Of a stretch of DNA of 64,000 nucleotides, positions 43,370 through 64,000 are shown one piece after another. The notes below the pieces were generated by a model. That model worked only from the letters and a program-made list of their open reading frames with translations, did not search any database and had not been told where the DNA came from. The stretch is from IMG/VR virus record IMGVR_UViG_3300032242_003291, positions 186,001 through 250,000 of that record. One strand, 5' to 3'. Position 1 is the first letter of the stretch, and the number at the start of each line of letters is the position of its first letter. A program made the position numbers and the translations under genes.

Positions 43370-44474
43370 GATTATAAATATCTGTAATCATTTTTAATGC
43401 CTGAGCAATTATTTGATGCATGTCGTAATACACATATGTTGCCAATCTGCCACCAAATATAACGTTTTTAAGACCCTTAGTTAGTTCGTGATACCTATTA
43501 TAGACCTGAGTGTTTTTATCGTCTCTAATTGGGTAATATGGTTCGTTATGACCATCGTATTCTTCAGGGAACTCGTAACTTATGATTGTACCTTTTTGAC
43601 CTTGATAGTCAAACCATTTATGTTCTAATATTCTGGTAAAAAGAGTTGTGGAATCTGTATAATTAACCACAGGATTACCTTGGAAATTACCTTCATCTAT
43701 CGTAACATTGGTCCAACTCAAACTTCTGTAATCTAACTTACCAAACTGATAATCAAAATATCTGTCTATCGGTCCTGTATATATTATTTTCTCTGCAAGA
43801 TTGTCATAATATTCACGGTTATCGAAATAATCTTGACCTAAAGAAACATCAATACCTTCTAACATTTTTTCAAATATTTGAGTATATCCACCTATAGGTA
43901 TTCCAGTATATTTGTCATTAAAGTAATTACTATCCCACGTGAATCTTATAGGTAATCTTTTAATAATTGATGCTGGTAATTCACTACAGGGTCTACCCCA
44001 TTGTTTAGTGGTATAGCCATTGATAAGTTTTTCGTAAATATCATCACCAACAATTGACCTTGCTTGTTCTTCGAGATTTTTAACTTCGCCTTTATACCTT
44101 TGTTTTTTGATGATTTCTTTTGCATCTTCTTCGGTTTTAACACCCCACAGTTGGTTAAAGGTCCACATGTTGAATGGGAGTGTGAACATTTCTCCGTTGT
44201 AATTCGCAATAACATTATGACTATATTGTTTAAATTCAGCAAATTGATTTATGTAATCCCAAATATATTTTTCATTAGTGTGGAATATATGTGCCCCGTA
44301 TCTGTGAACATGAATACCATTAACATTTTCAGTGTAACAATTTCCTCCAAGAGTGTTTCTTTTATCAATGACTAAACAAGATTTACCTCTCTTAGTAAGT
44401 TCATAAGCACAAACGGAACCATAAGGTCCCGCTCCTATTATGAGGTAATCATATTTTTTATCGATTAAAATCAT
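43353..44474 (-). CDS. glf: UDP-galactopyranose mutase
   Basis: IIGAG, GGNC, HRYGAHIFH, YTGPID, TRILEHK, EPYYP, GRLATYVYYDMHQ. Confidence 0.97.
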   Translation of the reverse strand: MILIDKKYDYLIIGAGPYGSVCAYELTKRGKSCLVIDKRNTLGGNCYTENVNGIHVHRYGAHIFHTNEKYIWDYINQFAEFKQYSHNVIANYNGEMFTLPFNMWTFNQLWGVKTEEDAKEIIKKQRYKGEVKNLEEQARSIVGDDIYEKLINGYTTKQWGRPCSELPASIIKRLPIRFTWDSNYFNDKYTGIPIGGYTQIFEKMLEGIDVSLGQDYFDNREYYDNLAEKIIYTGPIDRYFDYQFGKLDYRSLSWTNVTIDEGNFQGNPVVNYTDSTTLFTRILEHKWFDYQGQKGTIISYEFPEEYDGHNEPYYPIRDDKNTQVYNRYHELTKGLKNVIFGGRLATYVYYDMHQIIAQALKMITDIYNHESLS

Positions 44475-45628
44475 TTGAAATCAAATTTAATTGAATCTAA
44501 ATTAATTGAAAATTCTCCAACCTTTTTTTCTATTTTGTTTTTCCAATCAACAAGATGGTTGCTTGAATTGTAATAAGCTCTATCTTCAATAAGGAACGCA
44601 AGTGTTGGGAATGGATTAACTCTTTCAGGTTGTAACATTTTTTTAAAATGAGGAATCATTTCTTCTAACTTTCCTTTTCTTTCTAAATGTTCACACAAAT
44701 AGAGTAAATGTTCATTTCTTTGTGGTTGGAATTGTTCAGCCAATAAATAATGTTCTTCAGCAGATTTATTGTCTCCAATAAAACTATGTGCATGTCCCAT
44801 CGTACAAAGAGCAAAATAACACATTTCATCTTCATGTTTAGCAGTCTTAGAGTTAGACCAATCATGAGTTAATTCTAAAAATCTTTCATAGTACCATATT
44901 GAACGTCTAGCATATTCATCGGAATGTTTTTTACCAAAGGGTAGTTCACTTGGATTACCATAACAATCAGCATAACTTTTGGCAATATACCATAAATGAT
45001 AATAGTCTTCCAAAACTTTATTTCCAACAACCTTATCTTTCTCTAATTCCAACGCATCATTTAGAAATTTTCTTGGTACGTGCCAAGTTTCACCATCTTG
45101 TGATACCTTGTGTCTAAACCCCCATGGCATTCCAACTCTTTGAAACCCTTCTCCGATTTCAGGTAAATGAATTGTCTCGTGTCTTTTATCATGTTGGAAA
45201 AACCAAGGTAATTTAGCATTCCAAAGCCATGTTCTAAAATATTTGGTATCACCAGCTTCAGCACCAATATTGAAACTTTGTATTGATGTGTTATCAAATA
45301 TAGACCAATCAAAATCTTCATCAACATGAAGTCTTTCATCAGCATCCATTCTTAAAATCCAATCACATCCATGTAAAGTTTTAAGTGCTTCTTGCAGGGT
45401 ATGGTCTCTGTTAAATCCAGGAAAGTTCCATTCAGTAAAATAAGTAAATCCTGGTATTTTTTTTTCTTCAAAGAAATTATCAATAACTTCTTTTGTGTTA
45501 TCTTCGGTTCCATTACATTGGATTACATAATAATCTATATATGGTGCAACTGACTCCAACATTCTTGTAATGGTCTTAGACTCATTGCCGACCATAGCAT
45601 TCAAACAAATTTTTGTTTTTTTATTCAT
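44471..45628 (-). CDS. glycosyltransferase family 2 with helical/TPR-like C-terminus
   Basis: CLNAMVGNE, NRDHTL, WILRMDADE, RHETIH. Confidence 0.85.
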   Translation of the reverse strand: MNKKTKICLNAMVGNESKTITRMLESVAPYIDYYVIQCNGTEDNTKEVIDNFFEEKKIPGFTYFTEWNFPGFNRDHTLQEALKTLHGCDWILRMDADERLHVDEDFDWSIFDNTSIQSFNIGAEAGDTKYFRTWLWNAKLPWFFQHDKRHETIHLPEIGEGFQRVGMPWGFRHKVSQDGETWHVPRKFLNDALELEKDKVVGNKVLEDYYHLWYIAKSYADCYGNPSELPFGKKHSDEYARRSIWYYERFLELTHDWSNSKTAKHEDEMCYFALCTMGHAHSFIGDNKSAEEHYLLAEQFQPQRNEHLLYLCEHLERKGKLEEMIPHFKKMLQPERVNPFPTLAFLIEDRAYYNSSNHLVDWKNKIEKKVGEFSINLDSIKFDFK

Positions 45629-46868
45629 AAATGTAATTCATAACTTGTTCTTCTTTGAAGAACTTTTTAACGGGTTGATGATTCTGAAATTTATGAGAAT
45701 GTTCTCTTTCTTCATCCCAACACCAATCTTCAAATCCTAATTCTTGGATTCTTTTATGTATTGCCTTGTCATAATAATCTCTTATCAATCTGGCTCTTCT
45801 GTTTATATCTTGTGCATTATTATCAACTGTACTATTTCTATTGTTATATTGTAAGTATAACATTCGTTTTACGTGAATAAACCTTGTATGTAAAAAACTC
45901 TTAACAATCATTTCAAAATCATCAGCAACGGGGGTATTTTTGTTATGTCCACCGATTTTGTGGTAAAGATTTCTTTCCCACATTCTAACGTGGTCTGGCA
46001 TTGAAATATTGAATCTTATTGTTAAAGGATTTATATCAGGGTACCAATGAGCTAAATAATCTTTACCGTCAGCGTTAACCCATGTATGACCAGCATATCC
46101 AAAATCAAAATAGTTATCATGTCTTCCGTACCAATTACCTGACCAATCGTGGTCATATGTTTTCATTTCTCCATCATCATATAATTCACAAACATCGCTA
46201 TATAAAAATCCTGCATCAGGATGTTTTAAAATTGCGTCATTACATATCTCAAGACACTTATTTACAAATTTATCATCGTGGTCTAACTCAACCAACCAAT
46301 CGCCATCACATAACATTGCCGCCCTATGTTTAGCAAGTCCGACATTACCACCTGATACTGGTAATATTTTATGTATTTTTACCCTATAATCATTTTTAGA
46401 TATATCTTGGATAATATTCCATGTCTCATCATCAGGTGAATCATCAACAATAACCCATTCCCAATTTGTCCACGTTTGATTAACCAAACCTTGATAGGTT
46501 CTTTTAATTCTTTCTCCTGTTTGATATGTTGGAGTAAAAATTGAGAATCTCGGTCTGTTGACTTTAGTATGTCTAAAAACTGTTTGACACACTATAACAT
46601 TTGCCAACACATTATCGCCCAACATCTCATCATAATGAATGTGCATTTGTCTCAATTGGTGATGAGGAATTTCGATTAGTTCATTAAAAGATATAATTAA
46701 ATCAGGTTGATAATTTGTATAATCACCGACAACATCATTGTTATAAGGTAAAGAATAGACAACAACGTCGTCAAACAAAGATTCTTCAAAATAAACATCA
46801 GAAACTAAAGTTATTTCTCCTTTGATTTCTAGTCCATAAACAATTGCGCTTGGTTTTTTTGTCTTCAT
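45621..46868 (-). CDS. glycosyltransferase family 2 (C-terminal domain)
   Basis: FSIFTPTY, WVIVDDS, ELDHDD, VADD. Confidence 0.9.
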   Translation of the reverse strand: MKTKKPSAIVYGLEIKGEITLVSDVYFEESLFDDVVVYSLPYNNDVVGDYTNYQPDLIISFNELIEIPHHQLRQMHIHYDEMLGDNVLANVIVCQTVFRHTKVNRPRFSIFTPTYQTGERIKRTYQGLVNQTWTNWEWVIVDDSPDDETWNIIQDISKNDYRVKIHKILPVSGGNVGLAKHRAAMLCDGDWLVELDHDDKFVNKCLEICNDAILKHPDAGFLYSDVCELYDDGEMKTYDHDWSGNWYGRHDNYFDFGYAGHTWVNADGKDYLAHWYPDINPLTIRFNISMPDHVRMWERNLYHKIGGHNKNTPVADDFEMIVKSFLHTRFIHVKRMLYLQYNNRNSTVDNNAQDINRRARLIRDYYDKAIHKRIQELGFEDWCWDEEREHSHKFQNHQPVKKFFKEEQVMNYIYE

Positions 46869-53337: not shown

Positions 53338-54003
53338 ATGAACAATTTTTTTTTATTTTCTGAAAAACATGAGTCTTTTGTATGGCTTCCATCGAGAACA
53401 GGAAGTAATCATTCATTTAGTATTCTAAAGTCTTTCGAGTTTGAAAATTATACATATTCAAAAAAAACTAATATGTTGGAACGTTCAAATACTTTTGGTT
53501 ATGGGCATTCACTTAATCGATTTCCAAACGATGAAAATTATTGTTTGATAAGTACCGCAAGGCATCCATATACAAGATTGGTTTCTTTTTTCAAGATTTC
53601 AAGATGTTTCAAATATAAAAATAGTTATTCAATAAATTATACGATGGATGAACCTCTGAACGAAAGAAAATTAAAATTCAAAAATTTTTTAGATGGTATA
53701 TTAAATAATCCATCTATAATTCATCCTGCACTTAGAAGTTATACTTTAGATAGAATTCCTAACTTTTTTTTAAGGGTTGAAAATTTGTATGAAGACTATA
53801 TTAAAATTCCCTTCATATCATCAAGTGAATTTAATTTGAGTGGTGAATTAGAAAAAAAATGTTTAATAAAAGAAAACCCAAACAAAATCGATTTGACTCC
53901 TTGGCGAGAATATTTTGACCAATCAGTCGCAGATTTGATTTACAGTAAAACTGAACAATATTGTAACTTATTAGGTTATGAAAGGGATATTTGGAAGAAT
54001 TAA
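53338..54003 (+). CDS. sulfotransferase (Sulfotransfer_2-like)
   Basis: PSRTGS, TARHPYTR, FLRVENLYED. Confidence 0.75.
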   Translation: MNNFFLFSEKHESFVWLPSRTGSNHSFSILKSFEFENYTYSKKTNMLERSNTFGYGHSLNRFPNDENYCLISTARHPYTRLVSFFKISRCFKYKNSYSINYTMDEPLNERKLKFKNFLDGILNNPSIIHPALRSYTLDRIPNFFLRVENLYEDYIKIPFISSSEFNLSGELEKKCLIKENPNKIDLTPWREYFDQSVADLIYSKTEQYCNLLGYERDIWKN

Positions 54004-54524
54004 TTCTTGATAGGATTTTGAATATCCGACATAAGTCTATAAGTTCTTATGATACCTAAATCAGTTAAAGTAACTCTTTCAACTTCTATTCCCCAATCTT
54101 TTGCCAATACTTTAACCTCTTCTGTAATGACATCATTAACATCAACCAAGTCATTCCAGTCTGTTCTTTCAACAATATCTCTAATAACTCCTTGAGTGGT
54201 GTCAACAAGGACATCCGCAGCGTGATTAACACTCATTAGAAATTTTTTCACATCATACACATGATATCTTATTATTGATTTTAATACAATATTTTTTTCA
54301 TCCTGTGTAGTTAAAGTTTGAGGTTGGAGATGTACTGTTTGTGTGATAACATATGATGTCCAAATATGGTCTAAAAACGGGATTTTGAATCTAATTCCAG
54401 GTTTTATAATTCTTAAAAACTTTCCGCCTCTCATGTGAATTCCTCCCATCCATTCACTAACAATAACCACAGGTATTAGTTCATCTTTTAAGTTTAACAG
54501 GAAATCTATCAGTTTATCGAACAT
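54000..54524 (-). CDS. SPFH/band-7 domain protein
   Basis: PGIRFKIPF, QTLTTQD, WGIEVERVTLTD; promoter at 54543-54574. Confidence 0.85.
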   Translation of the reverse strand: MFDKLIDFLLNLKDELIPVVIVSEWMGGIHMRGGKFLRIIKPGIRFKIPFLDHIWTSYVITQTVHLQPQTLTTQDEKNIVLKSIIRYHVYDVKKFLMSVNHAADVLVDTTQGVIRDIVERTDWNDLVDVNDVITEEVKVLAKDWGIEVERVTLTDLGIIRTYRLMSDIQNPIKN

Positions 54525-54542
54525 ATATTTTAATTTGAAATA

Positions 54543-54574
54543 CAAAGATAAACATTTTTTCTTAAATCAACAAA
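54543..54574 (-). promoter_or_regulatory. Bacteroidota primary-sigma promoter
   Basis: TTTG-N20-TATCTTTG. Confidence 0.8.
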
Positions 54575-54604: not shown

Positions 54605-55642
54605 TTAATACCATGTTTGTCTTTTCTCATCAAACGTCCAACCATCTCTTTGTTCTCCAGGTTCTCCTGTACCTGTTGGTGGTTGTGGTGATTTTTGTGT
54701 TGTTTGCTCAGGTGCTTGTTGTGCTGATTGTTGCGCTTGTTGTGGCGCTGGTTGTGTTGTATCATTATCCCCTTCAACACCTTGTTTTGTTGTATTTCCA
54801 CTATCTTCAACAGCTGTGTAGTCACTGTATGGATTATTATTCTGAGTTTGGCCACCTTTCAAATATTCATCTTTATATGACGCCCATGCCTTTGTTGTTC
54901 TTGGACCCATTCTACCATAACCCGCACCTGTTTTGTTCAAAATATTATTAGCATACCCTGTAGCCCAACCTGCCTTGTTTTCATCTAACCAATCTTGGAA
55001 AGCCTTTACTCCTTTAATATCTTTTAATTCAGGTGGCGTCGGAGTTACACTTGAAGTAGAGCCACCCCCGCCACTTTTTTTATTAGTATCACTTTTCCAT
55101 TTTTTTGTCGCAGAAGTAAAACTATCACCATCAGCAGTGTTTATTATTAGATTAGTTCCATCTACTTTCCAAGTTCCAGTCCATGTGTCAGATACTGCTT
55201 TTCTAGCTAAAAGATTATCCCATCCATCAGAAATATAAAATTTTCCATCAGGCATAAATCCATAATAATACTTTTCATTCTCACCAGTTCTTTGTGCAGC
55301 AAGTAATCCAGTGTCTTTATTTCTCACAGTTGGATAATGAATAACCTTAAAATAAGATGTATCTTTTAGGAAAGCCATCAAAATAGGAAATTTGTCAAAC
55401 CATCCTGTAGTTGAGGCAACATTATATTTAGCGTCAAGTTCTGCTTGCTTTTTGTTAGCTGCGGCAATGTCGTCAGCAGTTCTGTGTTCAGTACCAGGGT
55501 CTATTTTGTTTAGTTCCGCTCTTTCATAACTACCAATCACATCTTCATTAAATTCTTGTTCAGAAATTACTCTACCTCTTTGATATCCAAATAAGGATTT
55601 CATTCTTGTGATATCTTCATTAATCAATTTTTTTGAATCCAT
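54605..55642 (-). CDS. leader-bearing protein with PG-binding-like segment and Gln/Pro/Thr tail
   Basis: MDSKKLINEDITRMKSL...VISEQ; VKAFQDWLD...GPRTTKAW; TATTTATAAATA at 55651-55662. Confidence 0.7.
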   Translation of the reverse strand: MDSKKLINEDITRMKSLFGYQRGRVISEQEFNEDVIGSYERAELNKIDPGTEHRTADDIAAANKKQAELDAKYNVASTTGWFDKFPILMAFLKDTSYFKVIHYPTVRNKDTGLLAAQRTGENEKYYYGFMPDGKFYISDGWDNLLARKAVSDTWTGTWKVDGTNLIINTADGDSFTSATKKWKSDTNKKSGGGGSTSSVTPTPPELKDIKGVKAFQDWLDENKAGWATGYANNILNKTGAGYGRMGPRTTKAWASYKDEYLKGGQTQNNNPYSDYTAVEDSGNTTKQGVEGDNDTTQPAPQQAQQSAQQAPEQTTQKSPQPPTGTGEPGEQRDGWTFDEKRQTWY

Positions 55643-55674
55643 GTCTATTTTATTTATAAATATTCAATAAAACA

Positions 55675-55705
55675 AAAAACCCCATCCGTAGAAACGGACA
55701 GGGTT
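55675..55705 (-). terminator. intrinsic terminator after the large ncRNA
   Basis: aaccc-tgtccgt..acggatgggtttttt on the minus strand. Confidence 0.7.
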
Positions 55706-55716
55706 AAGGCAAAAAA

Positions 55717-56480
55717 GGTTGAGAATACACCAAATTGAGAGAGTCTTTACAGGAGATTATTTTGATTCCTCCGATTTCCACTTCCTTTTGAGAAGTAACT
55801 CTCAGTCACGGTCAATTAGATTAACCAATCCTTAAGTCGTAATATACTCTATTCTTACTCATCACTCTTCGAGGTTGCCACCCCAATTAATCCTTGCGAG
55901 ATTAGAGAACTTTCAAAACAATCGTATCGGGTTTGGGACCCTCTACGGCCATGAACAACTCATGACTAAGTAGTGACCTGTCTACCACGACTGATGAACA
56001 CTTTTCCTTGTATTATTAATTGATTTGTTAGAATCCAAATTTTAACAAAGGTTGTGATTTGTGGATGATAGATGTAGCGGTTCATCAAACCAGCCATCTC
56101 ATCTTTTGAACGAGACGATACTGAACTACACCTTGAAGTCTCCCGACCTCCATATCTCAAGTTTACTTCATAACTCCTACCTTGGTAGGTGAAGAGTAAG
56201 GAGAACAACAGCACCACCTGTACGAACCCATACCTTTCGGTTTTAAGTCTACTCTAATATTGAACTCCGTAATTGTATAGTTGGATGACCATACTTCTTA
56301 CAACAGCTCTACGAGTTATTCTTATTGGAGTTCCCTCCTCAACCAAACGACCCACATCGCTTGGTCACCCAACCACTTTCCCTACAGTGTTACCCTCAGT
56401 ACTAAAGGTCAGATGATATCCCGCTTGTCTACTCGAGCTCCCTTTCGGAAGCCGCAACCGTTCCAATCAAGAACGAATCA
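55717..56480 (-). ncRNA. large structured ncRNA (~760 nt), probably GOLLD class
   Basis: GC-richer tract without credible CDS; own promoter (56626-56657) and boxA-like site; long-range helices 56336-56344/55717-55725 and 56217-56222/55748-55753; next to a tRNA; 5' end approximate. Confidence 0.6.
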
Positions 56481-56625
56481 CTTTATACTACTTTCATAGT
56501 TTATTTTATGGATTATAGACCACCCAATATTTTTATTCAAAGAACTATCAAATTTGAAGGAGAGAGGAAACTTTACGACCAAGTAAACTTGGAACCTTTA
56601 CTACCTCTTTCCTTCATTTGTCTTA

Positions 56626-56657
56626 CAAAGATAAGATTGTTTTTGGAAACAATCAAA
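56626..56657 (-). promoter_or_regulatory. Bacteroidota primary-sigma promoter for the large ncRNA
   Basis: TTTG-N20-TATCTTTG; AGTTCTTTGAA at ~56536-56546 downstream. Confidence 0.85.
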
Positions 56658-56689
56658 TCTTTTAAGAGATTTTTTAACATAATAACTGA

Positions 56690-56770
56690 TTTAGTTATTC
56701 TCCATTGAAGATGTGTTATTCACCTTCAATCACCCCCTACTCGTAATAGGACAGGTTAACTTTCTCTCCG
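56690..56770 (-). ncRNA. small structured RNA of unknown class
   Basis: Own promoter (56806-56837) and boxA-like AGTTCTTTAACA (56771-56782); two hairpins; no ORF. Confidence 0.5.
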
Positions 56771-56805
56771 TGTTAAAGAACTAACAACTCTCGTCGTTTG
56801 TTTTT

Positions 56806-56837
56806 CAAAGATAAGAAGAACTTTTCAATTCGTCAAA
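56806..56837 (-). promoter_or_regulatory. Bacteroidota primary-sigma promoter
   Basis: TTTG-N20-TATCTTTG. Confidence 0.85.
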
Positions 56838-56893
56838 TCTTTTTTTAAAAATAGGGAACCTCGATTTTACGACCATAGTCAACCCATTCTTAG

Positions 56894-56965
56894 TTGCGAG
56901 GGATGGATTCGAACCACCGACCTAAAGGTTATGAGCCTTCCGAGCTACCTCTGCTCTACCTCACG
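56894..56965 (-). tRNA. tRNA-Met(CAT), initiator type
   Basis: Cloverleaf with CAT anticodon, TTCGAAT T-loop, C1:A72 mismatch, A11:U24; no encoded CCA. Confidence 0.92.
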
Positions 56966-56977
56966 ATATATCTTAAT

Positions 56978-57045
56978 GATTACAAACCCACTTCCCCACG
57001 GTCACCTATCCACGTCATGCGCTGGTTGTACCAGCGGGTGTAATC
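56978..57045 (-). ncRNA. tRNA-sized structured RNA of unknown class
   Basis: 7-bp closing stem GATTACA/TGTAATC, internal CGCTGGT/ACCAGCG hairpin, between a boxA-like site and tRNA-Met. Confidence 0.5.
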
Positions 57046-57131
57046 AAATTTATTAAAGAACTATCTCAAAAAGAAGTCCCACAAGCTTCAGTATTTCTCT
57101 CGAATCACACACTCGTGGGACATTTGTTTTA

Positions 57132-57163
57132 CAAAGGTAAGTGATAGTTTTGACACTGTCAAA
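57132..57163 (-). promoter_or_regulatory. Bacteroidota primary-sigma promoter for the tRNA unit
   Basis: TTTG-N20-TACCTTTG; leader hairpin 57077-57120; AGTTCTTTAA at 57053-57062. Confidence 0.85.
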
Positions 57164-57263
57164 TTTTTATAAAACTTTTTTTGGGGATGTTTGTCCATTC
57201 GGACTTGGATATATAAATATATCCGTTTTCATCAAAGTCTCACAAAGATAGATAAATTTTTCA

Positions 57264-57683
57264 CTATTGTAAAATAATTTCAGCTAATTTGTAAAAATAT
57301 TCTCCTGATGTCTCAGGTTTTATCTCTTTCAGAGTAAAATAACCACACTCTGTATGTTCATCTCCATCTATTGCATTCAACAGGTCAGGGTATAATGGAG
57401 TCTCAATTTCTAATAAATAAACATACATAAAACCTTTTACTTTTTTTCCGTCTCGGGTATGTCTTGGGATTAATCCGACAAACTTTAATTCAAGGTCACC
57501 AATATTAATATTTGTTTCCTCGAGAAACTCTCTTTTAGCGCCCTCTTGTGTTGTTTCATTTTCTTCTAACTTGCCACCAGGTATAGACCACATACCAGGA
57601 TATGACCCCTGATTATTTCTTTTACATAAAAGAAGTTTGTTTTTATATTTTACAGCAACCCCGACGTATCTTTTTTTATCCAT
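57264..57683 (-). CDS. NUDIX hydrolase
   Basis: WSIPGGKLEENETTQEGAKREFLEETNI Nudix box. Confidence 0.95.
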   Translation of the reverse strand: MDKKRYVGVAVKYKNKLLLCKRNNQGSYPGMWSIPGGKLEENETTQEGAKREFLEETNINIGDLELKFVGLIPRHTRDGKKVKGFMYVYLLEIETPLYPDLLNAIDGDEHTECGYFTLKEIKPETSGEYFYKLAEIILQ

Positions 57684-57697
57684 GGTATTTATATTAT

Positions 57698-58045
57698 ATG
57701 AAAGTTAAAATTAACGAAAATATTATTAAAGTAAAAACATTAATTGACAAACATTCTCAAGCAATTGGTATGATGGGAAAAAAATTTGACAAATCATTTA
57801 ATGGTTTATTATTTTTAATGGGTGGAAAAAAACAATGCTTTTGGATGAAGAATTGTATCATCCCATTAGACATAATAATAATAAAAAATAATGTAATAGT
57901 TAATATACATCAAGATTGTCCTCCTTGTAATGAAGAACCTTGTCCTTCTTATTGTGGAAGAGGTAATATAGTTTTAGAACTTGCTGGTGGTAGTTGTGAG
58001 AGTCTTAACATACAACCTGGTGATTCTGTTGAATATCTATTTTAA
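57698..58045 (+). CDS. DUF192 family protein
   Basis: GMMG, GLLF, FWMKNCIIPLDII, VLELAGG...NIQPGD; TATTTAT at 57686-57692. Confidence 0.9.
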   Translation: MKVKINENIIKVKTLIDKHSQAIGMMGKKFDKSFNGLLFLMGGKKQCFWMKNCIIPLDIIIIKNNVIVNIHQDCPPCNEEPCPSYCGRGNIVLELAGGSCESLNIQPGDSVEYLF

Positions 58046-59449
58046 TTTAGATTCTTTTTCTTCTTCAATCTTTTCTTTTAGTTTTGTTTTGAATTCGTTG
58101 GCTATCATCTTTGTAAATTTAACATAAGGGTGGTCTTCGCTCTCAGGATTATAACGATAAGAACCTTGAGGTGGTCTTGTACCTCTACCCAAATAACTTA
58201 ATCCTCCAATGTTTGTGATACATTTATGCCCACCTGAATTAGATTGAATTAAATCCCATGCATTTACCAAGATACTGTCTAAAATGTTTTTTTCTCTATC
58301 AGTCAAATCTTTGAATGGTTTCTCCATCATCTCCCTAATCTTATCTAAAGCTTCCTCCCCTTTTGGAATACCTATGAATTTACCACCATATATCGCATCA
58401 AAATCTTGGAACGTATACCCAATACTTTCAGGACCAACACTAGTCTCGCTAATCCATTTAATTGTAGATAATGGTATTTTCTTGTCTTTGAGTTGACCTT
58501 CCCATTTTGATAATACTTCTTGTGCTATCTCACCTAAATTTACGCCTTTAAGTCCTCGGTCTTTTTTGAAGGGATTACAAGATGCTTGAACTAATCCCAT
58601 GGGCCAAGCCATAATCAAAAAATCGGATTCAGGATTATTTCTGAATGGTGTGTATCTATCATAAGAACCTGGTTTGAACATACTACCACCACCATATTGA
58701 TAAATTATATTATCACTAACCTGAGGAAAATCCTTCATTTGTTGTGCATAATCATCTGCATTTGATTGTAATTCTTCAGGACCTACTGAATTGGTCTTTT
58801 TCATCCACTCTTTGATGTTTCCTAATATTGAAAGTAATGATGGTTCCGAATCCATAACCAATCCTTCCAAAAAACCTGGCTTATTTTTGAATGCTAAAAT
58901 TAATTTGTTAATGACCAAACCTAACAACATTTTATTTTTTTGTAATGATTTGTCTTTATCGAATCTGTATATATAATTTACGACTTCATCAGGAGTAATA
59001 TTGTGTTTAATAAAATCCGCAGAGTCTACAGTATTAATTAACAAAACATCTGATGTTGGAAACAAATCTTTTGTTGATACTACTTGAGATATCGTTTCGA
59101 CATTTGAACGTGCACCTCTAAATTGTTTTGATGTTCCCTTTTCAACCCCTACTTGTGTGTCATGATGGTCAGTATGAATTTTGAACATTGGTTTACCGTG
59201 AGCAAAATCTACAAGGACAGGCATTGTATCACCTGTTGCATCATTTTTTTTAACTGAAAACTCCTTGTCACCATATTGAATTACATGAGCCCCAACAACA
59301 TCAATACCATTATCTTCAAGATATTTTTTCATTGCAATTGCTGTTGTAACACCATCTAAGTCCTGATGAAAATAAATTTCGGCTTTGGGATATCTTTTCC
59401 TCAAAGCCGAAATATCTCTTATACCGCTTTCGTTAATTAATTTTTTCAT
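58037..59449 (-). CDS. DHH-family phosphoesterase-like protein with short leader
   Basis: MKKLINE-SG; YFHQDLDG, VDFAH, HTDHH, INTVDSAD, SGGH. Confidence 0.75.
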   Translation of the reverse strand: MKKLINESGIRDISALRKRYPKAEIYFHQDLDGVTTAIAMKKYLEDNGIDVVGAHVIQYGDKEFSVKKNDATGDTMPVLVDFAHGKPMFKIHTDHHDTQVGVEKGTSKQFRGARSNVETISQVVSTKDLFPTSDVLLINTVDSADFIKHNITPDEVVNYIYRFDKDKSLQKNKMLLGLVINKLILAFKNKPGFLEGLVMDSEPSLLSILGNIKEWMKKTNSVGPEELQSNADDYAQQMKDFPQVSDNIIYQYGGGSMFKPGSYDRYTPFRNNPESDFLIMAWPMGLVQASCNPFKKDRGLKGVNLGEIAQEVLSKWEGQLKDKKIPLSTIKWISETSVGPESIGYTFQDFDAIYGGKFIGIPKGEEALDKIREMMEKPFKDLTDREKNILDSILVNAWDLIQSNSGGHKCITNIGGLSYLGRGTRPPQGSYRYNPESEDHPYVKFTKMIANEFKTKLKEKIEEEKESKLK

Positions 59450-59814
59450 TAAAGTCCAATCCAATTTAGGAATCTATCCATTAAACCTCCTTCATCTGCA
59501 ACAAGGTCTTGTAATTGTTTTCTGTCTTGTGGTGGCATTTTACTCCAAGTTTCTTCACCCCACACTCCATCAGGTCTTCTACAACCAATACTTGATTGAT
59601 ATCTCGATATTGCTTGTGATGTTTGTGATGTTTGATTGATGTCCGTTTTACCGTCAACAGTCAGTGGTTGTCTATTATCACCTGTAATTTTTTTATTATT
59701 CAAGAATCTTTGAATTGCTCTAATGAATTGTCTATCCATGTTTTGTTCTGAAATAACTCTTTTAACAAGATTAGTTAAATCGTTTTCTGTAAGTCTTATT
59801 ATTTTTTTTGCCAT
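59449..59814 (-). CDS. leader-bearing peptidoglycan-binding domain protein
   Basis: MAKKIIRLTENDLTNLVKRVISEQ; IRAIQRFLN...LTVDG...AISRYQ...PDGVWGEETW. Confidence 0.8.
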   Translation of the reverse strand: MAKKIIRLTENDLTNLVKRVISEQNMDRQFIRAIQRFLNNKKITGDNRQPLTVDGKTDINQTSQTSQAISRYQSSIGCRRPDGVWGEETWSKMPPQDRKQLQDLVADEGGLMDRFLNWIGL

Positions 59815-59829
59815 GTTATTGTTTTTATA

Positions 59830-61002
59830 TTAAACTGCTGCTAATGCCGATTTAGCCACTTGACTACCAAATAGTGATGAGAAAAAGTCTCCCACAGGAT
59901 TTGATGATGATGTTGATTGTGTTGTTGATTGTGAAGGTTGTGTTTGTTGTTGAGTTCCTTGAGGTGTTTCTGTACCAAAACTATCTTTAAAATATTGTTG
60001 TGCTTGTGGTGTCTGATTATATTGTGCAACTTTAGACTCAAACTTATCTTGACCCATTTTTTCAACTGCTTCCTCAGGTCCTACAAAATTTCCTATTCCC
60101 ATCCAATCTAAAAAACCCAACCACCATTTGGTTTGTCTTGCTAAAGCTCTAACTGATTTGTTTCTACCCATCAACTGTGGCATGCCACCAAATAAAGTTT
60201 TCCAAGATAAAGCACCTTTAGTTGTCCTATATGATGTAAAGAGTCCTCCCGCTTCTTTGGACATTTTAATTAAATTTTCTAAGTTTTTAACTTGGTCAGC
60301 TTTGCTCAGTCTCAATATACCAGCACCACCCGCAGGAATTCCTTTAATTTTTGCCGCTAAATCAACACCAGCAGTTCTTATAGCCGCTCCTTTAGTTGCT
60401 CCTTTTTCAAATAATTCAATCCATTGTAATATTGTGTTTTTTAACCCTTTAAATGGTCCCATCGGCATTTTTTCGATGAAACCTTTCATTTTACTTCCAA
60501 TTCTACCCATTCCCTCTGTAAATTTACCAATAATTCCACCACCTTTAGTAAGTTTTTCAAGTTCAGCTGCCGCTTCTACAGATTTACCTGCTTCAGATAA
60601 TTTTAACACTCCCTCCAAAGCTTTGGCACTCGGTGCTCCAAGTTTTAATGCCCCCATCACAGGTTTTGCAACAATATCACCAATATATGGAACCGCAGAC
60701 ACTAAAGATAAAAATCCAAATAACTTATCTCCTTGAGAGATGTAAGAAATTCCATTAACTAAATCTACAACACCAGTTGGGTCAAAAATTCCAACAATAT
60801 CACCCAATGTATTATACCAATGACTTTCATTTAATTTTTTGGCTTTTTTTGGATACAAAACTTTTAAGAATTCTACAACAAATTCTTTTTCGTTAGTTGA
60901 AAATTTTTCCCAATTTTCAGTTGCTAATTTCCTATTATTTTCTTTTGAAATGTTTTCTTGAATTACTGCAAGTTGTTTTGTGGATATAATAATTTCCGCC
61001 AT
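59830..61002 (-). CDS. pre-toxin TG (PT-TG)-like domain protein
   Basis: LGDIVGIFDPTGVVDLVNG...QGD...LSLVSAVPYIGD; variant leader; TATTTAT at 61017-61023. Confidence 0.65.
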   Translation of the reverse strand: MAEIIISTKQLAVIQENISKENNRKLATENWEKFSTNEKEFVVEFLKVLYPKKAKKLNESHWYNTLGDIVGIFDPTGVVDLVNGISYISQGDKLFGFLSLVSAVPYIGDIVAKPVMGALKLGAPSAKALEGVLKLSEAGKSVEAAAELEKLTKGGGIIGKFTEGMGRIGSKMKGFIEKMPMGPFKGLKNTILQWIELFEKGATKGAAIRTAGVDLAAKIKGIPAGGAGILRLSKADQVKNLENLIKMSKEAGGLFTSYRTTKGALSWKTLFGGMPQLMGRNKSVRALARQTKWWLGFLDWMGIGNFVGPEEAVEKMGQDKFESKVAQYNQTPQAQQYFKDSFGTETPQGTQQQTQPSQSTTQSTSSSNPVGDFFSSLFGSQVAKSALAAV

Positions 61003-61033
61003 TTTTATTTTTCTTTATAAATATCCAAGAAAC

Positions 61034-61058
61034 AAAAAAAGGGTCATTCGACCCTTTT
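61034..61058 (-). terminator. intrinsic terminator
   Basis: aaaaaaagggtc-attc-gacccttt. Confidence 0.75.
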
Positions 61059-61059
61059 A

Positions 61060-61911
61060 TTATAAACCTAATTCTAATTGTTTGTTCAAATCAACAAAAT
61101 GTTGTACTCTTTCTTTTGCAATTTTGGTATAAGCATCACTTAATTCAATCCCAATCCACCTTCTGTTCCATATTTCAGCAGCACAAATACTTGTACCTGA
61201 ACCTGTAAATGGGTCTAACACAATATCATTTTTATATGATAGTATTTTGATGGCTTTGACTGGAATATCCATTGAGAATGTTGCCTTAGTCAATTGCTTG
61301 GTATCTGCAAAGTAATCCCATTGACCATAAACTAAATCCATAAATTCTTTCTTATCATCTTCTTGATATACATTTTTCTTTTTTACTGCACCGTCCTCCT
61401 GCTCGACGTCAATAATTTGTCCTTTCCATTGAGGTTCACCTTTAATTTTCTTAATGTGTGTTTTTTTGTAAGCCAACAATACACATTCTTTTGGATTATA
61501 TATGTATGGTGCCGATGGTGACATCCAAGAACCCCACGCTGTGGTTTTACTCCTATGTGGAGATTCTTCTTCCAAATCAACTATACCATAAAACTTATAA
61601 CCAATGTTTTTCATAATCTGCCAAAGTTCTGATACCATTAAAATTCTCCCACCTTTATCCTGTCTGTTAATTTCATAAGGAATGTTTAGGGCTATCCTCC
61701 CATCATCTTTCAATACTCTGTACGCCTCTCTTAACCAATTAGCACTGAAAACTTTGTATTGTTCAAATTCTATATCATCATCAAATGTATCATATTTGAT
61801 TCCAACACCGTAAGGTGGTGATGTTACGATTAGGTCTACGGAAGACTCAGGCATTTTTGCCATGACTTCAATACAATCCCCATTAATTACTTTACCTATA
61901 TAATCTTCCAT
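61060..61911 (-). CDS. orphan beta-class amino DNA methyltransferase (SPPY, likely N4-cytosine)
   Basis: DLIVTSPPY (motif IV) before VLDPFTGSGT (motif I); start re-assigned. Confidence 0.9.
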   Translation of the reverse strand: MEDYIGKVINGDCIEVMAKMPESSVDLIVTSPPYGVGIKYDTFDDDIEFEQYKVFSANWLREAYRVLKDDGRIALNIPYEINRQDKGGRILMVSELWQIMKNIGYKFYGIVDLEEESPHRSKTTAWGSWMSPSAPYIYNPKECVLLAYKKTHIKKIKGEPQWKGQIIDVEQEDGAVKKKNVYQEDDKKEFMDLVYGQWDYFADTKQLTKATFSMDIPVKAIKILSYKNDIVLDPFTGSGTSICAAEIWNRRWIGIELSDAYTKIAKERVQHFVDLNKQLELGL

Positions 61912-61916
61912 TATTT

Positions 61917-62150
61917 TTATTTTACTATTACTACGTCGCCCTTCCAAATGACTTCATTTGCCTGACAACTCATATGATGTTTATCCACTCGTTCACCTCT
62001 TTTATTATCCCAAACTAAATCTCTTGTGGTGTGTAAAGGTATCTCAACTATTACGTTAGATGCTGTCCATTCTACGCCATCAATTAGAATTCTCCAAAAC
62101 ATGTGATTATCTTCACACAAGGTATTCCATCTTATTTTAACGTCTATCAT
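61917..62150 (-). CDS. hypothetical protein
   Basis: 77 aa, operonic. Confidence 0.7.
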   Translation of the reverse strand: MIDVKIRWNTLCEDNHMFWRILIDGVEWTASNVIVEIPLHTTRDLVWDNKRGERVDKHHMSCQANEVIWKGDVVIVK

Positions 62151-62548
62151 AACTTACCTTCTTGCTTTAGTTGTTCTCTGATTTTGGTTGCGGAGATTTC
62201 ACTAACTTCTTGTGGTGGTATATGTTCGATAACATCATAACCGACTCCCCTTCCGAAATTAACTGACTCTATATCTGGGATTTTAATAACTTCAACCCTT
62301 CCTTCACTGATTAAATCCAACAATTCAACAGTTATGTTTGAATGAACTTGATTGGCTGTGAAAGGATTTTTTTCATCAGGTTCAACATCCCTAATACAAA
62401 TTAAAACATTTTTTCCTTGTTCTAATCTTTGGTCTATTAACCATCTATGACCTGCGTGCCATGGCTGCCATCTTCCAATAAACATTGAATATTGTTTACC
62501 GACGCTGTTTTTTAATTTTGGGTCTCCCTCTACGTGTATTTTTTCCAT
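62147..62548 (-). CDS. small HxGH nucleotidyltransferase (cytidylyltransferase/NadM-like)
   Basis: FIGRWQPWHAGH, KNPF, ISATKIR. Confidence 0.85.
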   Translation of the reverse strand: MEKIHVEGDPKLKNSVGKQYSMFIGRWQPWHAGHRWLIDQRLEQGKNVLICIRDVEPDEKNPFTANQVHSNITVELLDLISEGRVEVIKIPDIESVNFGRGVGYDVIEHIPPQEVSEISATKIREQLKQEGKL

Positions 62549-62549
62549 A

Positions 62550-62993
62550 TTAATATTCGTACGCCAGAATTGTTCTAGCACATTCTTGAACCGTTTTATT
62601 ATCAGTATTGATATCTACGAAAAGCTCAGTTGGAGCTTCATAGTTTTCTACAAAGAAATTTTCACGTCCTCTCACCTCTGTTGTATGAACGTAAAATTCA
62701 ACAAGATTATCTCCCATTTTTTTCTTGAAGTTCTCTCTTTGGTCTTTATACGGTGAAACTAACGACACAATAACATTATGTCCTTTAGATACTAGATATT
62801 GTGAAAGTTGTTGAGCCAACTCGATATTCTTTCTTCTACCTTGTTCCGAATAATCTTTATTATCAAATAATTCTCTGATGTCATCACCATCAACATTGAA
62901 TGAATTTTGAGTTAAAAGATTATTACAAATGTATTTTGCAATTGTAGTTTTTCCTGCTCCAGGTTGTCCTGTTAGCCAATAAATTTTAGCCAT
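62550..62993 (-). CDS. cysC: adenylyl-sulfate (APS) kinase
   Basis: WLTGQPGAGKTT, VDGDDIR, GRRKNI, VSLVSPY, YEAP. Confidence 0.9.
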   Translation of the reverse strand: MAKIYWLTGQPGAGKTTIAKYICNNLLTQNSFNVDGDDIRELFDNKDYSEQGRRKNIELAQQLSQYLVSKGHNVIVSLVSPYKDQRENFKKKMGDNLVEFYVHTTEVRGRENFFVENYEAPTELFVDINTDNKTVQECARTILAYEY

Positions 62994-63216
62994 TGTTTTC
63001 TAAGTTTTTTATTTTTCTATCTAAATAGAATGCCGCTTTCTTGAGGTCTTCCAATTCTTTTGCAGGGTCTTTCTTACCCGCTCTTGCAACATATTTAACT
63101 ACATTGAATAGGTACGCATCATAATCTAATCCCCAAGCTTCACAGACTTTTATTACTTCGTATGGATTATCTGCCCCACCATAGTGAGAAGGTCCATTTA
63201 CCATTTCTTTACTCAT
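62986..63216 (-). CDS. DUF3310-like phage protein
   Basis: VNGPSHY...NVVKYVARAGKK...EDLKKAAFYL. Confidence 0.85.
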   Translation of the reverse strand: MSKEMVNGPSHYGGADNPYEVIKVCEAWGLDYDAYLFNVVKYVARAGKKDPAKELEDLKKAAFYLDRKIKNLENNG

Positions 63217-63321
63217 TTTTTATTCCCCCATTTTTTTTCCATGTACTCAATATACCTGTCAGTTTTATTACCGTTGTATAAGAAATATACAAAATAATAA
63301 TCCCAAATCCAGTCTAATTTT

Positions 63322-63609
63322 TTAAGAAACTTTTTCATTTTTCTTCTTTTTCTTTTCTTTATCTTTTTGGTATTGTGCCGCGGTGTTTAAAGAAACTGCT
63401 GCCGCCTCATCGATTAAAACTTTATCAGTTTCGTGATTAGGATTAACTTCCGTTTCAACAACTTTCTTTCCTTTTGATAACTTCCACTCTGTTTTGGAAA
63501 TATATTGCCAGCTGCTGCCGACCATATTCATTGCAGTTTTTTCATCAACTCTTTTGATGTCACCTACATCTACGCCTTTAGACGCTCTGATTGCTTTGAT
63601 ACACTTCAT
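63322..63609 (-). CDS. hypothetical protein
   Basis: 95 aa, basic tail. Confidence 0.7.
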   Translation of the reverse strand: MKCIKAIRASKGVDVGDIKRVDEKTAMNMVGSSWQYISKTEWKLSKGKKVVETEVNPNHETDKVLIDEAAAVSLNTAAQYQKDKEKKKKKNEKVS

Positions 63610-63817
63610 TGGTTTTTTCCTCCATGTTTTTTTTGTTATTTATAATAGATAGAATCTCTTCATCAGTTTTTCCCTGAATGAATAGTTCATATATTTCTAC
63701 GCTTTCATCATCTTCGAAAGTGAGTCCATCACTTTTTCCGTAATACTTTCTTAAACCGCCTTCGCTCAAGGCTCTATAACTTCTTTCAAAGTCTACATAT
63801 CGTTGATTGAATCCCAT
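63578..63817 (-). CDS. hypothetical early protein
   Basis: Promoter at 63822-63853. Confidence 0.75.
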   Translation of the reverse strand: MGFNQRYVDFERSYRALSEGGLRKYYGKSDGLTFEDDESVEIYELFIQGKTDEEILSIINNKKNMEEKTNEVYQSNQSV

Positions 63818-63821
63818 ACAA

Positions 63822-63853
63822 CAAAGATAGTAAAATTATAATTCAGAGTCAAA
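63822..63853 (-). promoter_or_regulatory. Bacteroidota primary-sigma promoter
   Basis: TTTG-N20-TATCTTTG. Confidence 0.85.
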
Positions 63854-64000
63854 ATTACTTATCTTTTGAAAATTAACTACCTGAAAGACATATTGCATAA
63901 TTTTACGTTTCATAATTGGAATTAACGTTTCTTGCATTGGAAATGATTGTGAACATCTTGTTTCAAAGATTGGGAACTCTTTGTAATTTTCAACATTTGT

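What the first reader, a model, noticed from the sequence alone, without database searches (positions are those of the whole stretch)
55717..56625. ~760-nt structured RNA next to a tRNA, probably GOLLD
Seen: promoter, hairpin leader (56555-56617) and boxA-like site, then a long GC-richer tract ending in U6 and a terminator. The 3' end can pair far upstream (GGUUGAGGA with UUCUCAACC; UACAGG with CCUGUA). Known: GOLLD RNAs are ~800-nt phage-associated RNAs often found beside tRNAs, with unknown function. Inference: a Bacteroidota-phage GOLLD or a new giant RNA class. The class call is from size and context, not a model search.
Basis: partly seen in the sequence, partly recalled or inferred. Interest (0 to 1): 0.78.

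Follow-up and report, generated by a model that had tools for sequence, protein, structure and literature searches.

The report
GOLLD RNA gene in jumbo phage
The flagged stretch is a genuine copy of GOLLD, a known giant phage RNA that builds hollow RNA-only cages, here in a 317-kb phage of Bacteroidota; its one fresh feature is that it starts with the same anti-termination signal that bacteria use for ribosomal RNA.

Summary
Rfam's GOLLD model (RF02032) matches window 56133..55716 (- strand) over its whole length at 325 bits (threshold 150, E 2e-92). No other large-RNA family matches.

The conserved RNA is 815 nt (56530..55716), not about 760. Its 5' half is co-linear with GOLLD env-38, whose cryo-EM structure is a 14-subunit nanocage.

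In 84 relatives from IMG/VR, 227 predicted pairs are 95% canonical. Shifted controls give about 40%. 163 pairs carry compensatory changes.

Promoter, leader hairpin, boxA-like site, U6 and terminator are all present.

Contigs from four freshwater and estuary RNA libraries cover only the core, at very high depth.

The window is 100% identical to a 317-kb viral contig.

One side result may be new. The GTTCTTTGA motif upstream of GOLLD is found in 80 of 90 relatives and is the same boxA found in Bacteroidota 16S leaders (47 of 96). It also precedes the neighbouring tRNA-Met and an unknown small RNA. This suggests transcription in the rRNA manner, aided by host Nus factors.

Verdict: a new member of a known kind, of moderate interest.

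The parts
56626..56657 (-). Bacteroidota-type promoter of the GOLLD unit (-33 TTTG at 56657..56654; -7 TATCTTTG at 56633..56626). The inferred transcription start is near 56620.
   Evidence: Pattern match with enrichment in the window, 24 found against 5.8 expected. The same promoter sits at the same distance in relatives.
56555..56616 (-). Leader hairpin in a boxB-like position. The basal stem is UGAAGGAAAGAGG / CCUCUCUCCUUCA. Inside are two copies of a GU(A/C)GUAAAG..UUCC motif around a small inner hairpin.
   Evidence: Fold of -24.1 kcal/mol, z -4.0. The 11-bp stem is conserved in 13 relatives, with 4 pairs changed on both sides.
56537..56545 (-). boxA element GTTCTTTGA of the rRNA-leader type.
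   Evidence: Present within about 50 nt upstream of the GOLLD core in 80 of 90 non-duplicate relatives. The same 9-mer occurs in 47 of 96 Bacteroidota 16S leaders, peaking 100-225 nt upstream, with a shared aaaaGTTCTTTGAA context. It is close to the published consensus GYTCTTTAANA (PMC5725501).
56134..56530 (-). GOLLD 5' domain (397 nt), the cap-forming half in the env-38 structure.
   Evidence: Co-linear with the env-38 sequence printed in Supplementary Table 4 of PMC12286853. RNAalifold gives 116 pairs, 57 of them compensatory, in 12 sequences. Helices and covariation hold in 84 sequences. The GAAA loop at 56238..56235 (L11a-like) is kept in about 74 of 84.
55716..56133 (-). GOLLD 3' domain, the universally conserved half covered by the Rfam model. 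It includes the A/U-rich variable linker at about 56075..56003.
   Evidence: RF02032 match of 325.1 bits, E 2.4e-92, model positions 1-416 of 416, with no non-canonical pair flagged. Covariation. The P27 stem covaries.
55672..55715 (-). U6 run (55715..55710) followed by an intrinsic terminator (stem-loop 55705..55678, U-run 55677..55672).
   Evidence: Terminator scan. Fold of -18.5 kcal/mol, z -4.8. The nearest relatives carry a similar hairpin and U-run.
56893..56965 (-). tRNA-Met(CAT) upstream on the same strand, with a C1xA72 mismatch (initiator-like acceptor end).
   Evidence: ARAGORN and Rfam tRNA, 59.8 bits, with the mismatch flagged in the NC line. Of 83 relatives, 59 have a same-strand tRNA within 1 kb upstream, and in 46 it is tRNA-Met.
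57051..57163 (-). Promoter (57163..57132), leader hairpin (57121..57075) and boxA GTTCTTTAATA (57061..57051) of the tRNA-Met unit.
   Evidence: The motif matches GYTCTTTAANA exactly.
56672..56837 (-). Middle unit: promoter (56837..56806), boxA GTTCTTTAACA (56781..56771) and an unknown small RNA of about 100 nt.
   Evidence: No Rfam match even at E up to 5.

Best explanation
This is the gene for a GOLLD RNA carried by a jumbo phage of about 317 kb that infects Bacteroidota.

Shown here:
- Family membership.
- An 815-nt two-domain fold supported by covariation.
- The gene has its own host-type promoter and an intrinsic terminator.
- Phage and tRNA-Met context.
- Abundant matching RNA in environmental RNA libraries, limited to the core.

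Inferred:
1. Host RNA polymerase starts near 56620 and transcribes a leader hairpin and a boxA.
2. boxA binds host NusB/NusE and assembles an rRNA-type antitermination complex. That complex carries the polymerase through about 900 nt of untranslated, highly structured RNA without Rho termination, and may help it fold as it is made.
3. The leader is trimmed off.
4. The mature RNA, being co-linear with env-38, self-assembles into a closed homo-oligomeric RNA-only nanocage. The likely form is a 14-mer in which the 5' domains form the caps, the 3' domains form the rings, and the variable linker points inward.
5. The cage acts during lytic growth on the translation apparatus, for example by enclosing or sequestering tRNA or ribosome-related cargo. 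This last step is the weakest. No cargo is known for any GOLLD.
For: Identity and fold:
- Rfam GOLLD full-length hit at 325 bits. The two huge phages LR745206 and LR756502 carry homologous copies at 287 and 275 bits.
- The 5' domain is co-linear with env-38.
- 84 unique relatives at 59-100% identity: 227 pairs, 95.1% canonical against 38-44% in shifted controls, and 163 compensatory pairs against 64-89.
- The L11a-like GAAA loop and the covarying P27 stem are retained.

Expression and context:
- RNA-library contigs lie only on 55726..about 56540, at word depths up to 2.7e5. They are absent from flanking ORFs and nearly absent from the leader.
- Promoter and terminator.
- The window is 100% identical to a 317,259-bp IMG/VR contig. 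Relatives sit on contigs of up to 483 kb.
- tRNA-Met synteny.

boxA:
- 80 of 90 relatives carry it.
- The same motif occurs in 47 of 96 Bacteroidota 16S leaders, where about 0.3 would be expected by chance. The extended consensus is shared.
- In the window, only the three ncRNA promoters are followed by it.

Against: - No experiment ties this boxA to Nus factors in Bacteroidota or in this phage. The motif could serve another role, such as a processing site.
- The drop in RNA-library coverage at the leader could reflect sequence divergence among relatives rather than processing. Those libraries can also contain DNA (caveats printed).
- Oligomer state varies with helices in the 5' domain and P21: the S. 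agalactiae GOLLD forms a 10-mer and env-38 a 14-mer. It was not modelled here.
- No leader-trailer helix like that of rRNA operons was seen.
- The biological role of any GOLLD cage is unknown.
Confidence: 0.85

Rival explanations
1. A new class of giant structured RNA that only resembles GOLLD in size and context.
For: Before any model search, the call rested on size and context alone. The Rfam model does not cover the 5' half.
Against: Full-length GOLLD match at twice the gathering score. The uncovered 5' half is co-linear with the 5' domain of env-38, a canonical GOLLD.
Confidence: 0.01
2. The tract is protein-coding (ORF 56217..55966, 83 aa, or ORF 56281..56499 on the + strand), and its conservation reflects a peptide.
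For: ORFs of 72-83 aa exist in the region.
Against: In the frame homologous to the 83-aa ORF, 81 of 84 relatives have internal stops and 54 of 84 have length changes that are not a multiple of three. Substitutions follow base-pair covariation instead.
Confidence: 0.01
3. It is a GOLLD RNA, but the GTTCTTTGA element is not an antitermination signal. It would be a conserved processing or protein-binding site, or part of a phage-specific promoter-proximal element. GOLLD would then be made by unmodified RNA polymerase.
For: No functional data exist for boxA in Bacteroidota in the material read. The leader hairpin carries other recurrent motifs (GUCGUAAAG..UUCC) that hint at further unknown binding partners.
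Against: The motif is identical to the one in Bacteroidota 16S leaders, at a similar distance from the promoter and in the same A-rich context. Two of the three copies match the published gamma-proteobacterial consensus GYTCTTTAANA exactly. The motif follows only the promoters of untranslated RNAs.
Confidence: 0.3
4. The 3' end of the RNA pairs with the 5' domain, closing the molecule into one long-range-paired fold rather than two separate domains.
For: In the window itself both helices are perfectly complementary, 9/9 and 6/6. UGAG/CUCA complementarity is kept in 82-84 of 84 relatives.
Against: - There is no compensatory change. All nine pairs of the first helix form in 8 of 84 relatives and all six of the second in 23 of 84.
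- The 5' strands lie inside covarying local helices.
- The terminal ACC covaries with the local P27 partner.
- In env-38 the two domains are separate, and L27 pairs within the 3' domain.
Confidence: 0.04

Closest known systems
GOLLD RNA env-38 (marine metagenome; cryo-EM homo-14-mer nanocage, Kretsch et al. 2025, PMC12286853)
   Same: Both the 5' and 3' domains are co-linear block by block. The sizes are similar (815 against 833 nt). Both lie downstream of a tRNA-Met. The conserved GAAA loop, the L27 sequence GUAUUCUCA and the A/U-rich linker are all present.
   Different: The source here is a freshwater-type Bacteroidota jumbo phage rather than a marine scaffold. Some 5'-domain hairpins are shorter, so the 5' domain is 397 nt against 420. 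The oligomer state was not determined here. The upstream leader of env-38 was not available for comparison.
GOLLD RNAs of Lactobacillales and Streptococcus agalactiae prophages (Rfam RF02032; the Sag GOLLD forms a decamer, PMC12990946)
   Same: They share the conserved 3' domain (P14-P27) and the phage and tRNA context.
   Different: Sag GOLLD lacks P9, P11a-c and P21b and assembles as a 10-mer. The window's RNA has the env-38-type 5' domain and both P21 hairpins. The host phylum and promoter type also differ.
ROOL RNA (RF03087-type rumen/phage RNA; 8-mer nanocage)
   Same: It is a large phage-associated RNA near tRNAs that forms an RNA-only cage.
   Different: Sequence and fold are unrelated. 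No Rfam match to ROOL appears in the window.
Bacterial rRNA operon leader (boxB-boxA-boxC; rrnTAC with NusA/B/E/G, SuhB, S4)
   Same: The order is the same: promoter, then hairpin, then boxA, then a long untranslated structured RNA. The boxA sequence matches that of Bacteroidota 16S leaders.
   Different: The product is GOLLD, a tRNA or a small RNA, not rRNA. No leader-trailer helix was seen. Factor binding was not tested.
Lambdoid phage nut sites (boxA + boxB with protein N)
   Same: A phage uses boxA together with a hairpin to make host polymerase resistant to termination.
   Different: Here the elements precede non-coding RNA genes rather than early operons. No N-like protein was sought or found. 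The boxA is the full rRNA-type motif rather than the shorter lambda form (the lambda comparison rests on my own knowledge).

Membership tests
GOLLD RNA (Rfam RF02032) | Covariance-model score at or above the curated gathering score (150 bits) over the conserved 3' domain | tested here: met
   325.1 bits, E 2.4e-92, model positions 1-416 of 416, not truncated.
GOLLD RNA (Rfam RF02032) | The helices of the 3' domain, including the long-range bracketed helix, are kept by compensatory changes | tested here: met
   No non-canonical pair is flagged in the cmscan alignment. In 84 relatives the 10-bp helix 55992..55983:55844..55835 has 10 of 10 compensatory pairs, and the other 3'-domain helices are 85-100% canonical.
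GOLLD RNA (Rfam RF02032) | A separate, more variable, structured 5' domain, giving a total of about 800 nt | tested here: met
   397-nt 5' domain and 815 nt in total. It is co-linear with env-38, and 57 of 116 pairs are compensatory in 12 sequences.
GOLLD RNA (Rfam RF02032) | Phage or prophage location, often beside tRNA genes | tested here: met
   100% identical to a 317-kb IMG/VR viral contig. tRNA-Met lies 348 nt upstream of the boxA.
GOLLD RNA (Rfam RF02032) | Made as a discrete non-coding RNA | tested here: inconclusive
   Contigs from four RNA libraries cover only the core, at very high depth. They come from relatives at 85% likeness or more, and DNA carry-over cannot be excluded. The ORF in the region is not conserved.
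GOLLD RNA (Rfam RF02032) | Self-assembly into a dihedral RNA-only nanocage (10- to 14-mer) | not testable with these tools
   Inferred from co-linearity with env-38 only.
rRNA-type boxA antitermination leader | boxA sequence matching the host's rRNA-leader boxA, placed shortly after the promoter | tested here: met
   GTTCTTTGA lies about 75 nt after the inferred start. The same 9-mer occurs in 47 of 96 Bacteroidota 16S leaders, with a shared flanking consensus. The sister units match GYTCTTTAANA exactly.
rRNA-type boxA antitermination leader | Binding of NusB/NusE and resistance to Rho termination | not testable with these tools
ROOL, OLE, RNase P, tmRNA, group I/II introns (considered) | Match to the family's Rfam model | tested here: not met
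   In the window, only GOLLD and tRNA pass gathering scores. At E up to 5 on 55600..57300, none of these families appears. ARAGORN finds no tmRNA.

The most novel reading that the evidence does not exclude
In Bacteroidota jumbo phages, GOLLD and its companion non-coding RNAs are built as miniature rRNA-like transcription units. The companions are an initiator-like tRNA-Met and an unknown small RNA. Each unit has its own promoter, leader hairpin and host-type boxA. The phage would therefore recruit the host's ribosomal antitermination and RNA-chaperone complex to make and fold the nanocage RNA. Making these RNAs in bulk could also draw Nus factors away from host rRNA synthesis.
Probability: 0.45. 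Interest if true: 0.6.

Novelty: new member of a known kind. Interest (0 to 1): 0.4.

Why it matters
GOLLD is one of the largest bacterial and phage non-coding RNAs. Since 2025 it has been known to form an RNA-only cage larger than a ribosome, yet its function and biogenesis remain unknown.

This locus adds nothing new about the class itself. It does give a clean, fully delimited gene: promoter, leader, 815-nt core and terminator. It also comes with a family of at least 84 distinct relatives of the same type as the solved structure.

The conserved boxA leader gives a concrete and testable lead on how such a long untranslated RNA escapes Rho and gets folded. It also links GOLLD, an initiator-like tRNA and rRNA-style transcription in one island. 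That fits the suspected connection to translation.

Tried and rejected
- The coding potential of the overlapping ORF was rejected.
- Other Rfam families at a relaxed threshold gave only chance-level hits, such as L10_leader at 27 bits against a cut-off of 44, overlapping the terminator.
- A megablast of 24 kb of the window against GenBank phages found nothing.
- A blastn at lower stringency found only tRNA hits, apart from the two huge phages.
- An exact 44-mer of env-38 is not in IMG/VR. The comparison with env-38 was therefore made by eye, block by block, and env-38 residue numbers could not be mapped. The printed supplement text appears to lack about 17 nt.
- For that reason I did not assign loops to the named intermolecular bridges. 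Loop tables show GC and CG dinucleotides in the P21-region loops, but several are plain GNRA tetraloops, and I drew no conclusion.
- PHROGs, Pfam and NCBIfam scans of 20-odd window proteins gave no capsid or terminase hallmark. The phage assignment rests on identity to the IMG/VR contig.
- A search for a leader-trailer helix flanking GOLLD found only weak A/U complementarity that relatives do not conserve.
- No paper in the held library links GOLLD with boxA; all four hits were unrelated plant papers.
- The first 15-mer scan of IMG/VR returned mostly chance matches and had to be filtered with nhmmer.

Full report
**What is there**

On the minus strand, Rfam's GOLLD model (RF02032) matches 56133..55716 from its first to its last position. 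The score is 325.1 bits against a gathering score of 150, with E 2.4e-92. The only other gathering-level hit in the 64-kb window is a tRNA at 56965..56894, which ARAGORN calls tRNA-Met(CAT). A relaxed search of 55600..57300 (E up to 5) adds only chance-level hits. None is to ROOL, OLE, RNase P, tmRNA or introns. The Rfam model covers only the universally conserved 3' half of GOLLD, so the 5' half had to be checked separately.

**The 5' half and the family**

A blastn search of GenBank phages found that 56525..56206 resembles two uncultured huge phages, LR745206 (635 kb) and LR756502 (642 kb). Both carry full GOLLD matches directly downstream, at 287 and 275 bits, with tRNAs beside them.

Two pattern scans of IMG/VR, filtered with nhmmer, gave 126 viral loci with the same two-domain RNA. 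Of these, 84 are unique full-length sequences that are 59-100% identical to the window. Many sit on contigs of 100-483 kb.

The conserved core in the window is 56530..55716, which is 815 nt.

The env-38 GOLLD sequence is printed in Supplementary Table 4 of Kretsch et al. 2025. It is co-linear with the window's 5' domain, block by block. Shared blocks include:
- GGCCGC-TATGGTCG, AAATAAA, GAAAG, GGATAAAGTG and TGCGG;
- GAGCTTGAGTAGGCAAG, GAGATATC and GAGGGTAACACT-TAG;
- a GGAA-loop hairpin followed by CAATAAGAATAACTC-TAGA;
- a GAAA-loop hairpin;
- TAC-GGTGGTGC-GTT.

So this is the same architecture as the GOLLD whose cryo-EM structure is a D7 homo-14-mer cage.

**Structure support**

- With 12 sequences, RNAalifold predicts 116 pairs in the 5' domain. 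In 57 of them both sides have changed and the pair is kept.
- With 84 sequences over the whole core there are 227 pairs, 95.1% canonical. When the 3' partners are slid by 1-3 columns the figure falls to 38-44%. Compensatory double changes occur in 163 pairs, against 64-89 in the slid controls.
- The 3-bp P27 stem covaries freely (GGU/ACC, CGA/UCG, GGA/UCC, GCU/GGC and others). The GAAA loop that the structure paper calls L11a is kept in about 74 of 84 sequences.
- The 83-aa ORF that overlaps the region is broken by stops in 81 of 84 relatives.

The following are present at or near the stated places:
- the promoter, of the Bacteroidota type, TTTG-N20-TATCTTTG at 56657..56626 (the motif occurs 24 times in the window against 5.8 expected);
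- the leader hairpin at 56616..56555;
- the boxA-like site at 56545..56537;
- the higher G+C content;
- U6, then a strong terminator at 55705..55678.

The two long-range helices are not supported. For GGUUGAGGA/UUCUCAACC, only the invariant UGAG/CUCA core persists. The outer pairs are 37-76% canonical, nothing is compensatory, and all nine pairs form in 8 of 84 sequences. UACAGG/CCUGUA is complete in 23 of 84.

The 5' strands of both helices lie inside covarying local helices. The terminal ACC covaries with its local P27 partner. In env-38 the two domains are separate bodies, and L27 pairs within the 3' domain.

**Expression**

Public runs that hold this sequence are freshwater, aquatic and estuary metagenomes, and they include metatranscriptomes. 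I laid contigs of four RNA libraries on 55300..57400 at 85% likeness or more. Coverage runs only from the 55726..55796 bin to the 56507..56577 bin, with summed word depths up to 2.7e5. It is zero on both flanking coding regions and essentially zero on the leader.

This fits an abundant, discrete RNA trimmed to the core. Two caveats apply. The contigs come from a swarm of relatives, so less conserved flanks may simply fail to match. RNA libraries can also contain DNA.

**Genome and host**

Window 54743..64000 is 100% identical to IMGVR_UViG_3300032242_003291, a 317,259-bp viral contig. Protein scans found auxiliary genes but no capsid or terminase in this window. Those found were NUDIX, DUF192, N6/N4 DNA methylase, SPFH, glycosyltransferases and an APS-kinase-like protein. 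The promoter type and the boxA type point to a Bacteroidota host.

**The leader**

The same module of promoter, hairpin and GTTCTTT(A/G)A occurs three times in a row on this strand. It precedes the tRNA-Met, an unknown small RNA and GOLLD. None of the other 21 promoter matches in the window is followed by the motif.

Among 90 non-duplicate relatives with enough upstream sequence, 80 have the exact motif just upstream of the core. Most of the rest have one-letter variants after promoters of the same type.

I then sampled 96 Bacteroidota 16S leaders from GTDB genomes. Of these, 47 contain the same 9-mer within 450 nt upstream, concentrated 100-225 nt upstream. About 0.3 would be expected by chance. 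The extended consensus aaaaGTTCTTTGAA is shared with the GOLLD leaders.

Two of the window's three copies match exactly the published consensus GYTCTTTAANA, derived from E. coli (PMC5725501). boxA is reported to be necessary and sufficient to form the rRNA antitermination complex, which resists Rho and is proposed to chaperone rRNA folding (PMC10250234). I found no paper in the held library that links GOLLD with boxA.

**Mechanism**

Shown: a GOLLD gene with its own promoter, leader and terminator in a jumbo phage, with conserved tRNA-Met synteny (46 of 83 relatives).

Inferred, in falling order of confidence:
1. The RNA folds as two domains and self-assembles into a closed cage like env-38.
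2. boxA recruits host Nus factors, so that about 900 nt of untranslated RNA are completed and folded.
3. The leader is removed.
4. The cage acts on the translation apparatus during lytic growth. The literature offers only hypotheses for cargo, such as tRNAs or ribosomes.

**Verdict**

This is a new member of a known kind. The boxA leader is a modest but testable addition.

Noticed in passing
window 57163..55672 (- strand): There is a non-coding RNA island of three consecutive units: tRNA-Met, an unknown small RNA, and GOLLD. Each unit has its own Bacteroidota-type promoter, a leader hairpin and an rRNA-type boxA. In the window the motif follows only these three promoters.
   Followed up: yes
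window 56893..56965 (-): The tRNA-Met(CAT) has a C1xA72 mismatch at the top of the acceptor stem, which is the bacterial initiator hallmark. It has only two of the usual three G:C pairs next to the anticodon loop. A same-strand tRNA-Met lies upstream of GOLLD in 46 of 83 relatives.
   Followed up: partly
window 56672..56781 (-); also L054, L108, L012, L183, L025 and others: An unknown small RNA of about 100 nt lies between the tRNA and GOLLD. Its conserved hairpin is ACCUGUCCUAUUACGAGUAGGGGGU, with the stem covarying CCUA/UAGG to CCCA/UGGG, and there is a closing outer stem. It is found in about 24 of 122 relatives and has no Rfam match.
   Followed up: partly
window 56975..57046 (-); L093, L193: A conserved structured segment of about 70 nt lies between the boxA and the tRNA-Met. 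Its outer stem is GAUUACACCC...GGGUUUGUAAUC, and this covaries in L093. The inner block GUACAACCAG-GCAUGAC-UGGAU-GGUGAC is conserved. Its identity is unknown.
   Followed up: no
window 56568..56598 and 56852..56878 (-): The motif GGU(C/A)GUAAA(G/A)...(G)GUUCC recurs. It appears twice inside the GOLLD leader hairpin and once in the hairpin that trails the tRNA. It is also seen in the leaders of relatives (L201, L025, L171). It may be a protein-binding site.
   Followed up: no
window 56076..56086 with 55993..56002 (-): RNAalifold finds a 10-bp helix (GAUGAAC / GUUCAUC) that closes off the variable linker. It has 7 compensatory pairs and is 98% canonical in 84 sequences. The Rfam structure line marks these positions as unpaired.
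   Followed up: partly
window 57264..59464: The genes upstream of the RNA island recur in 35-47 of 93 relatives. They are a NUDIX hydrolase (57683..57264, -), a DUF192 protein (57602..58045, +) and a 475-aa protein with a weak DHH-domain hit (59464..58037, -). This may be plain synteny by descent.
   Followed up: partly
L054:6106-6184 and many other relatives: Many relatives have an extra spacer of about 70 nt between boxA and the GOLLD core. It has a conserved sequence (..UUAUCCAUUCAG..GAGACCUUCGGGUUGAUU..). The window lacks it: boxA is followed after 6 nt by the core.
   Followed up: no
window, whole: Bacteroidota-type promoters (TTTG-N17-22-TAnnTTTG) are enriched about fourfold, 24 found against 5.8 expected. 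The window also carries auxiliary genes: an APS-kinase-like protein (62550..62993), a cytidylyltransferase-like protein (62147..62581), a sulfotransferase-like protein (53338..54003), two glycosyltransferases (44471..46868) and an SPFH/Band 7 protein (54000..54545).
   Followed up: partly
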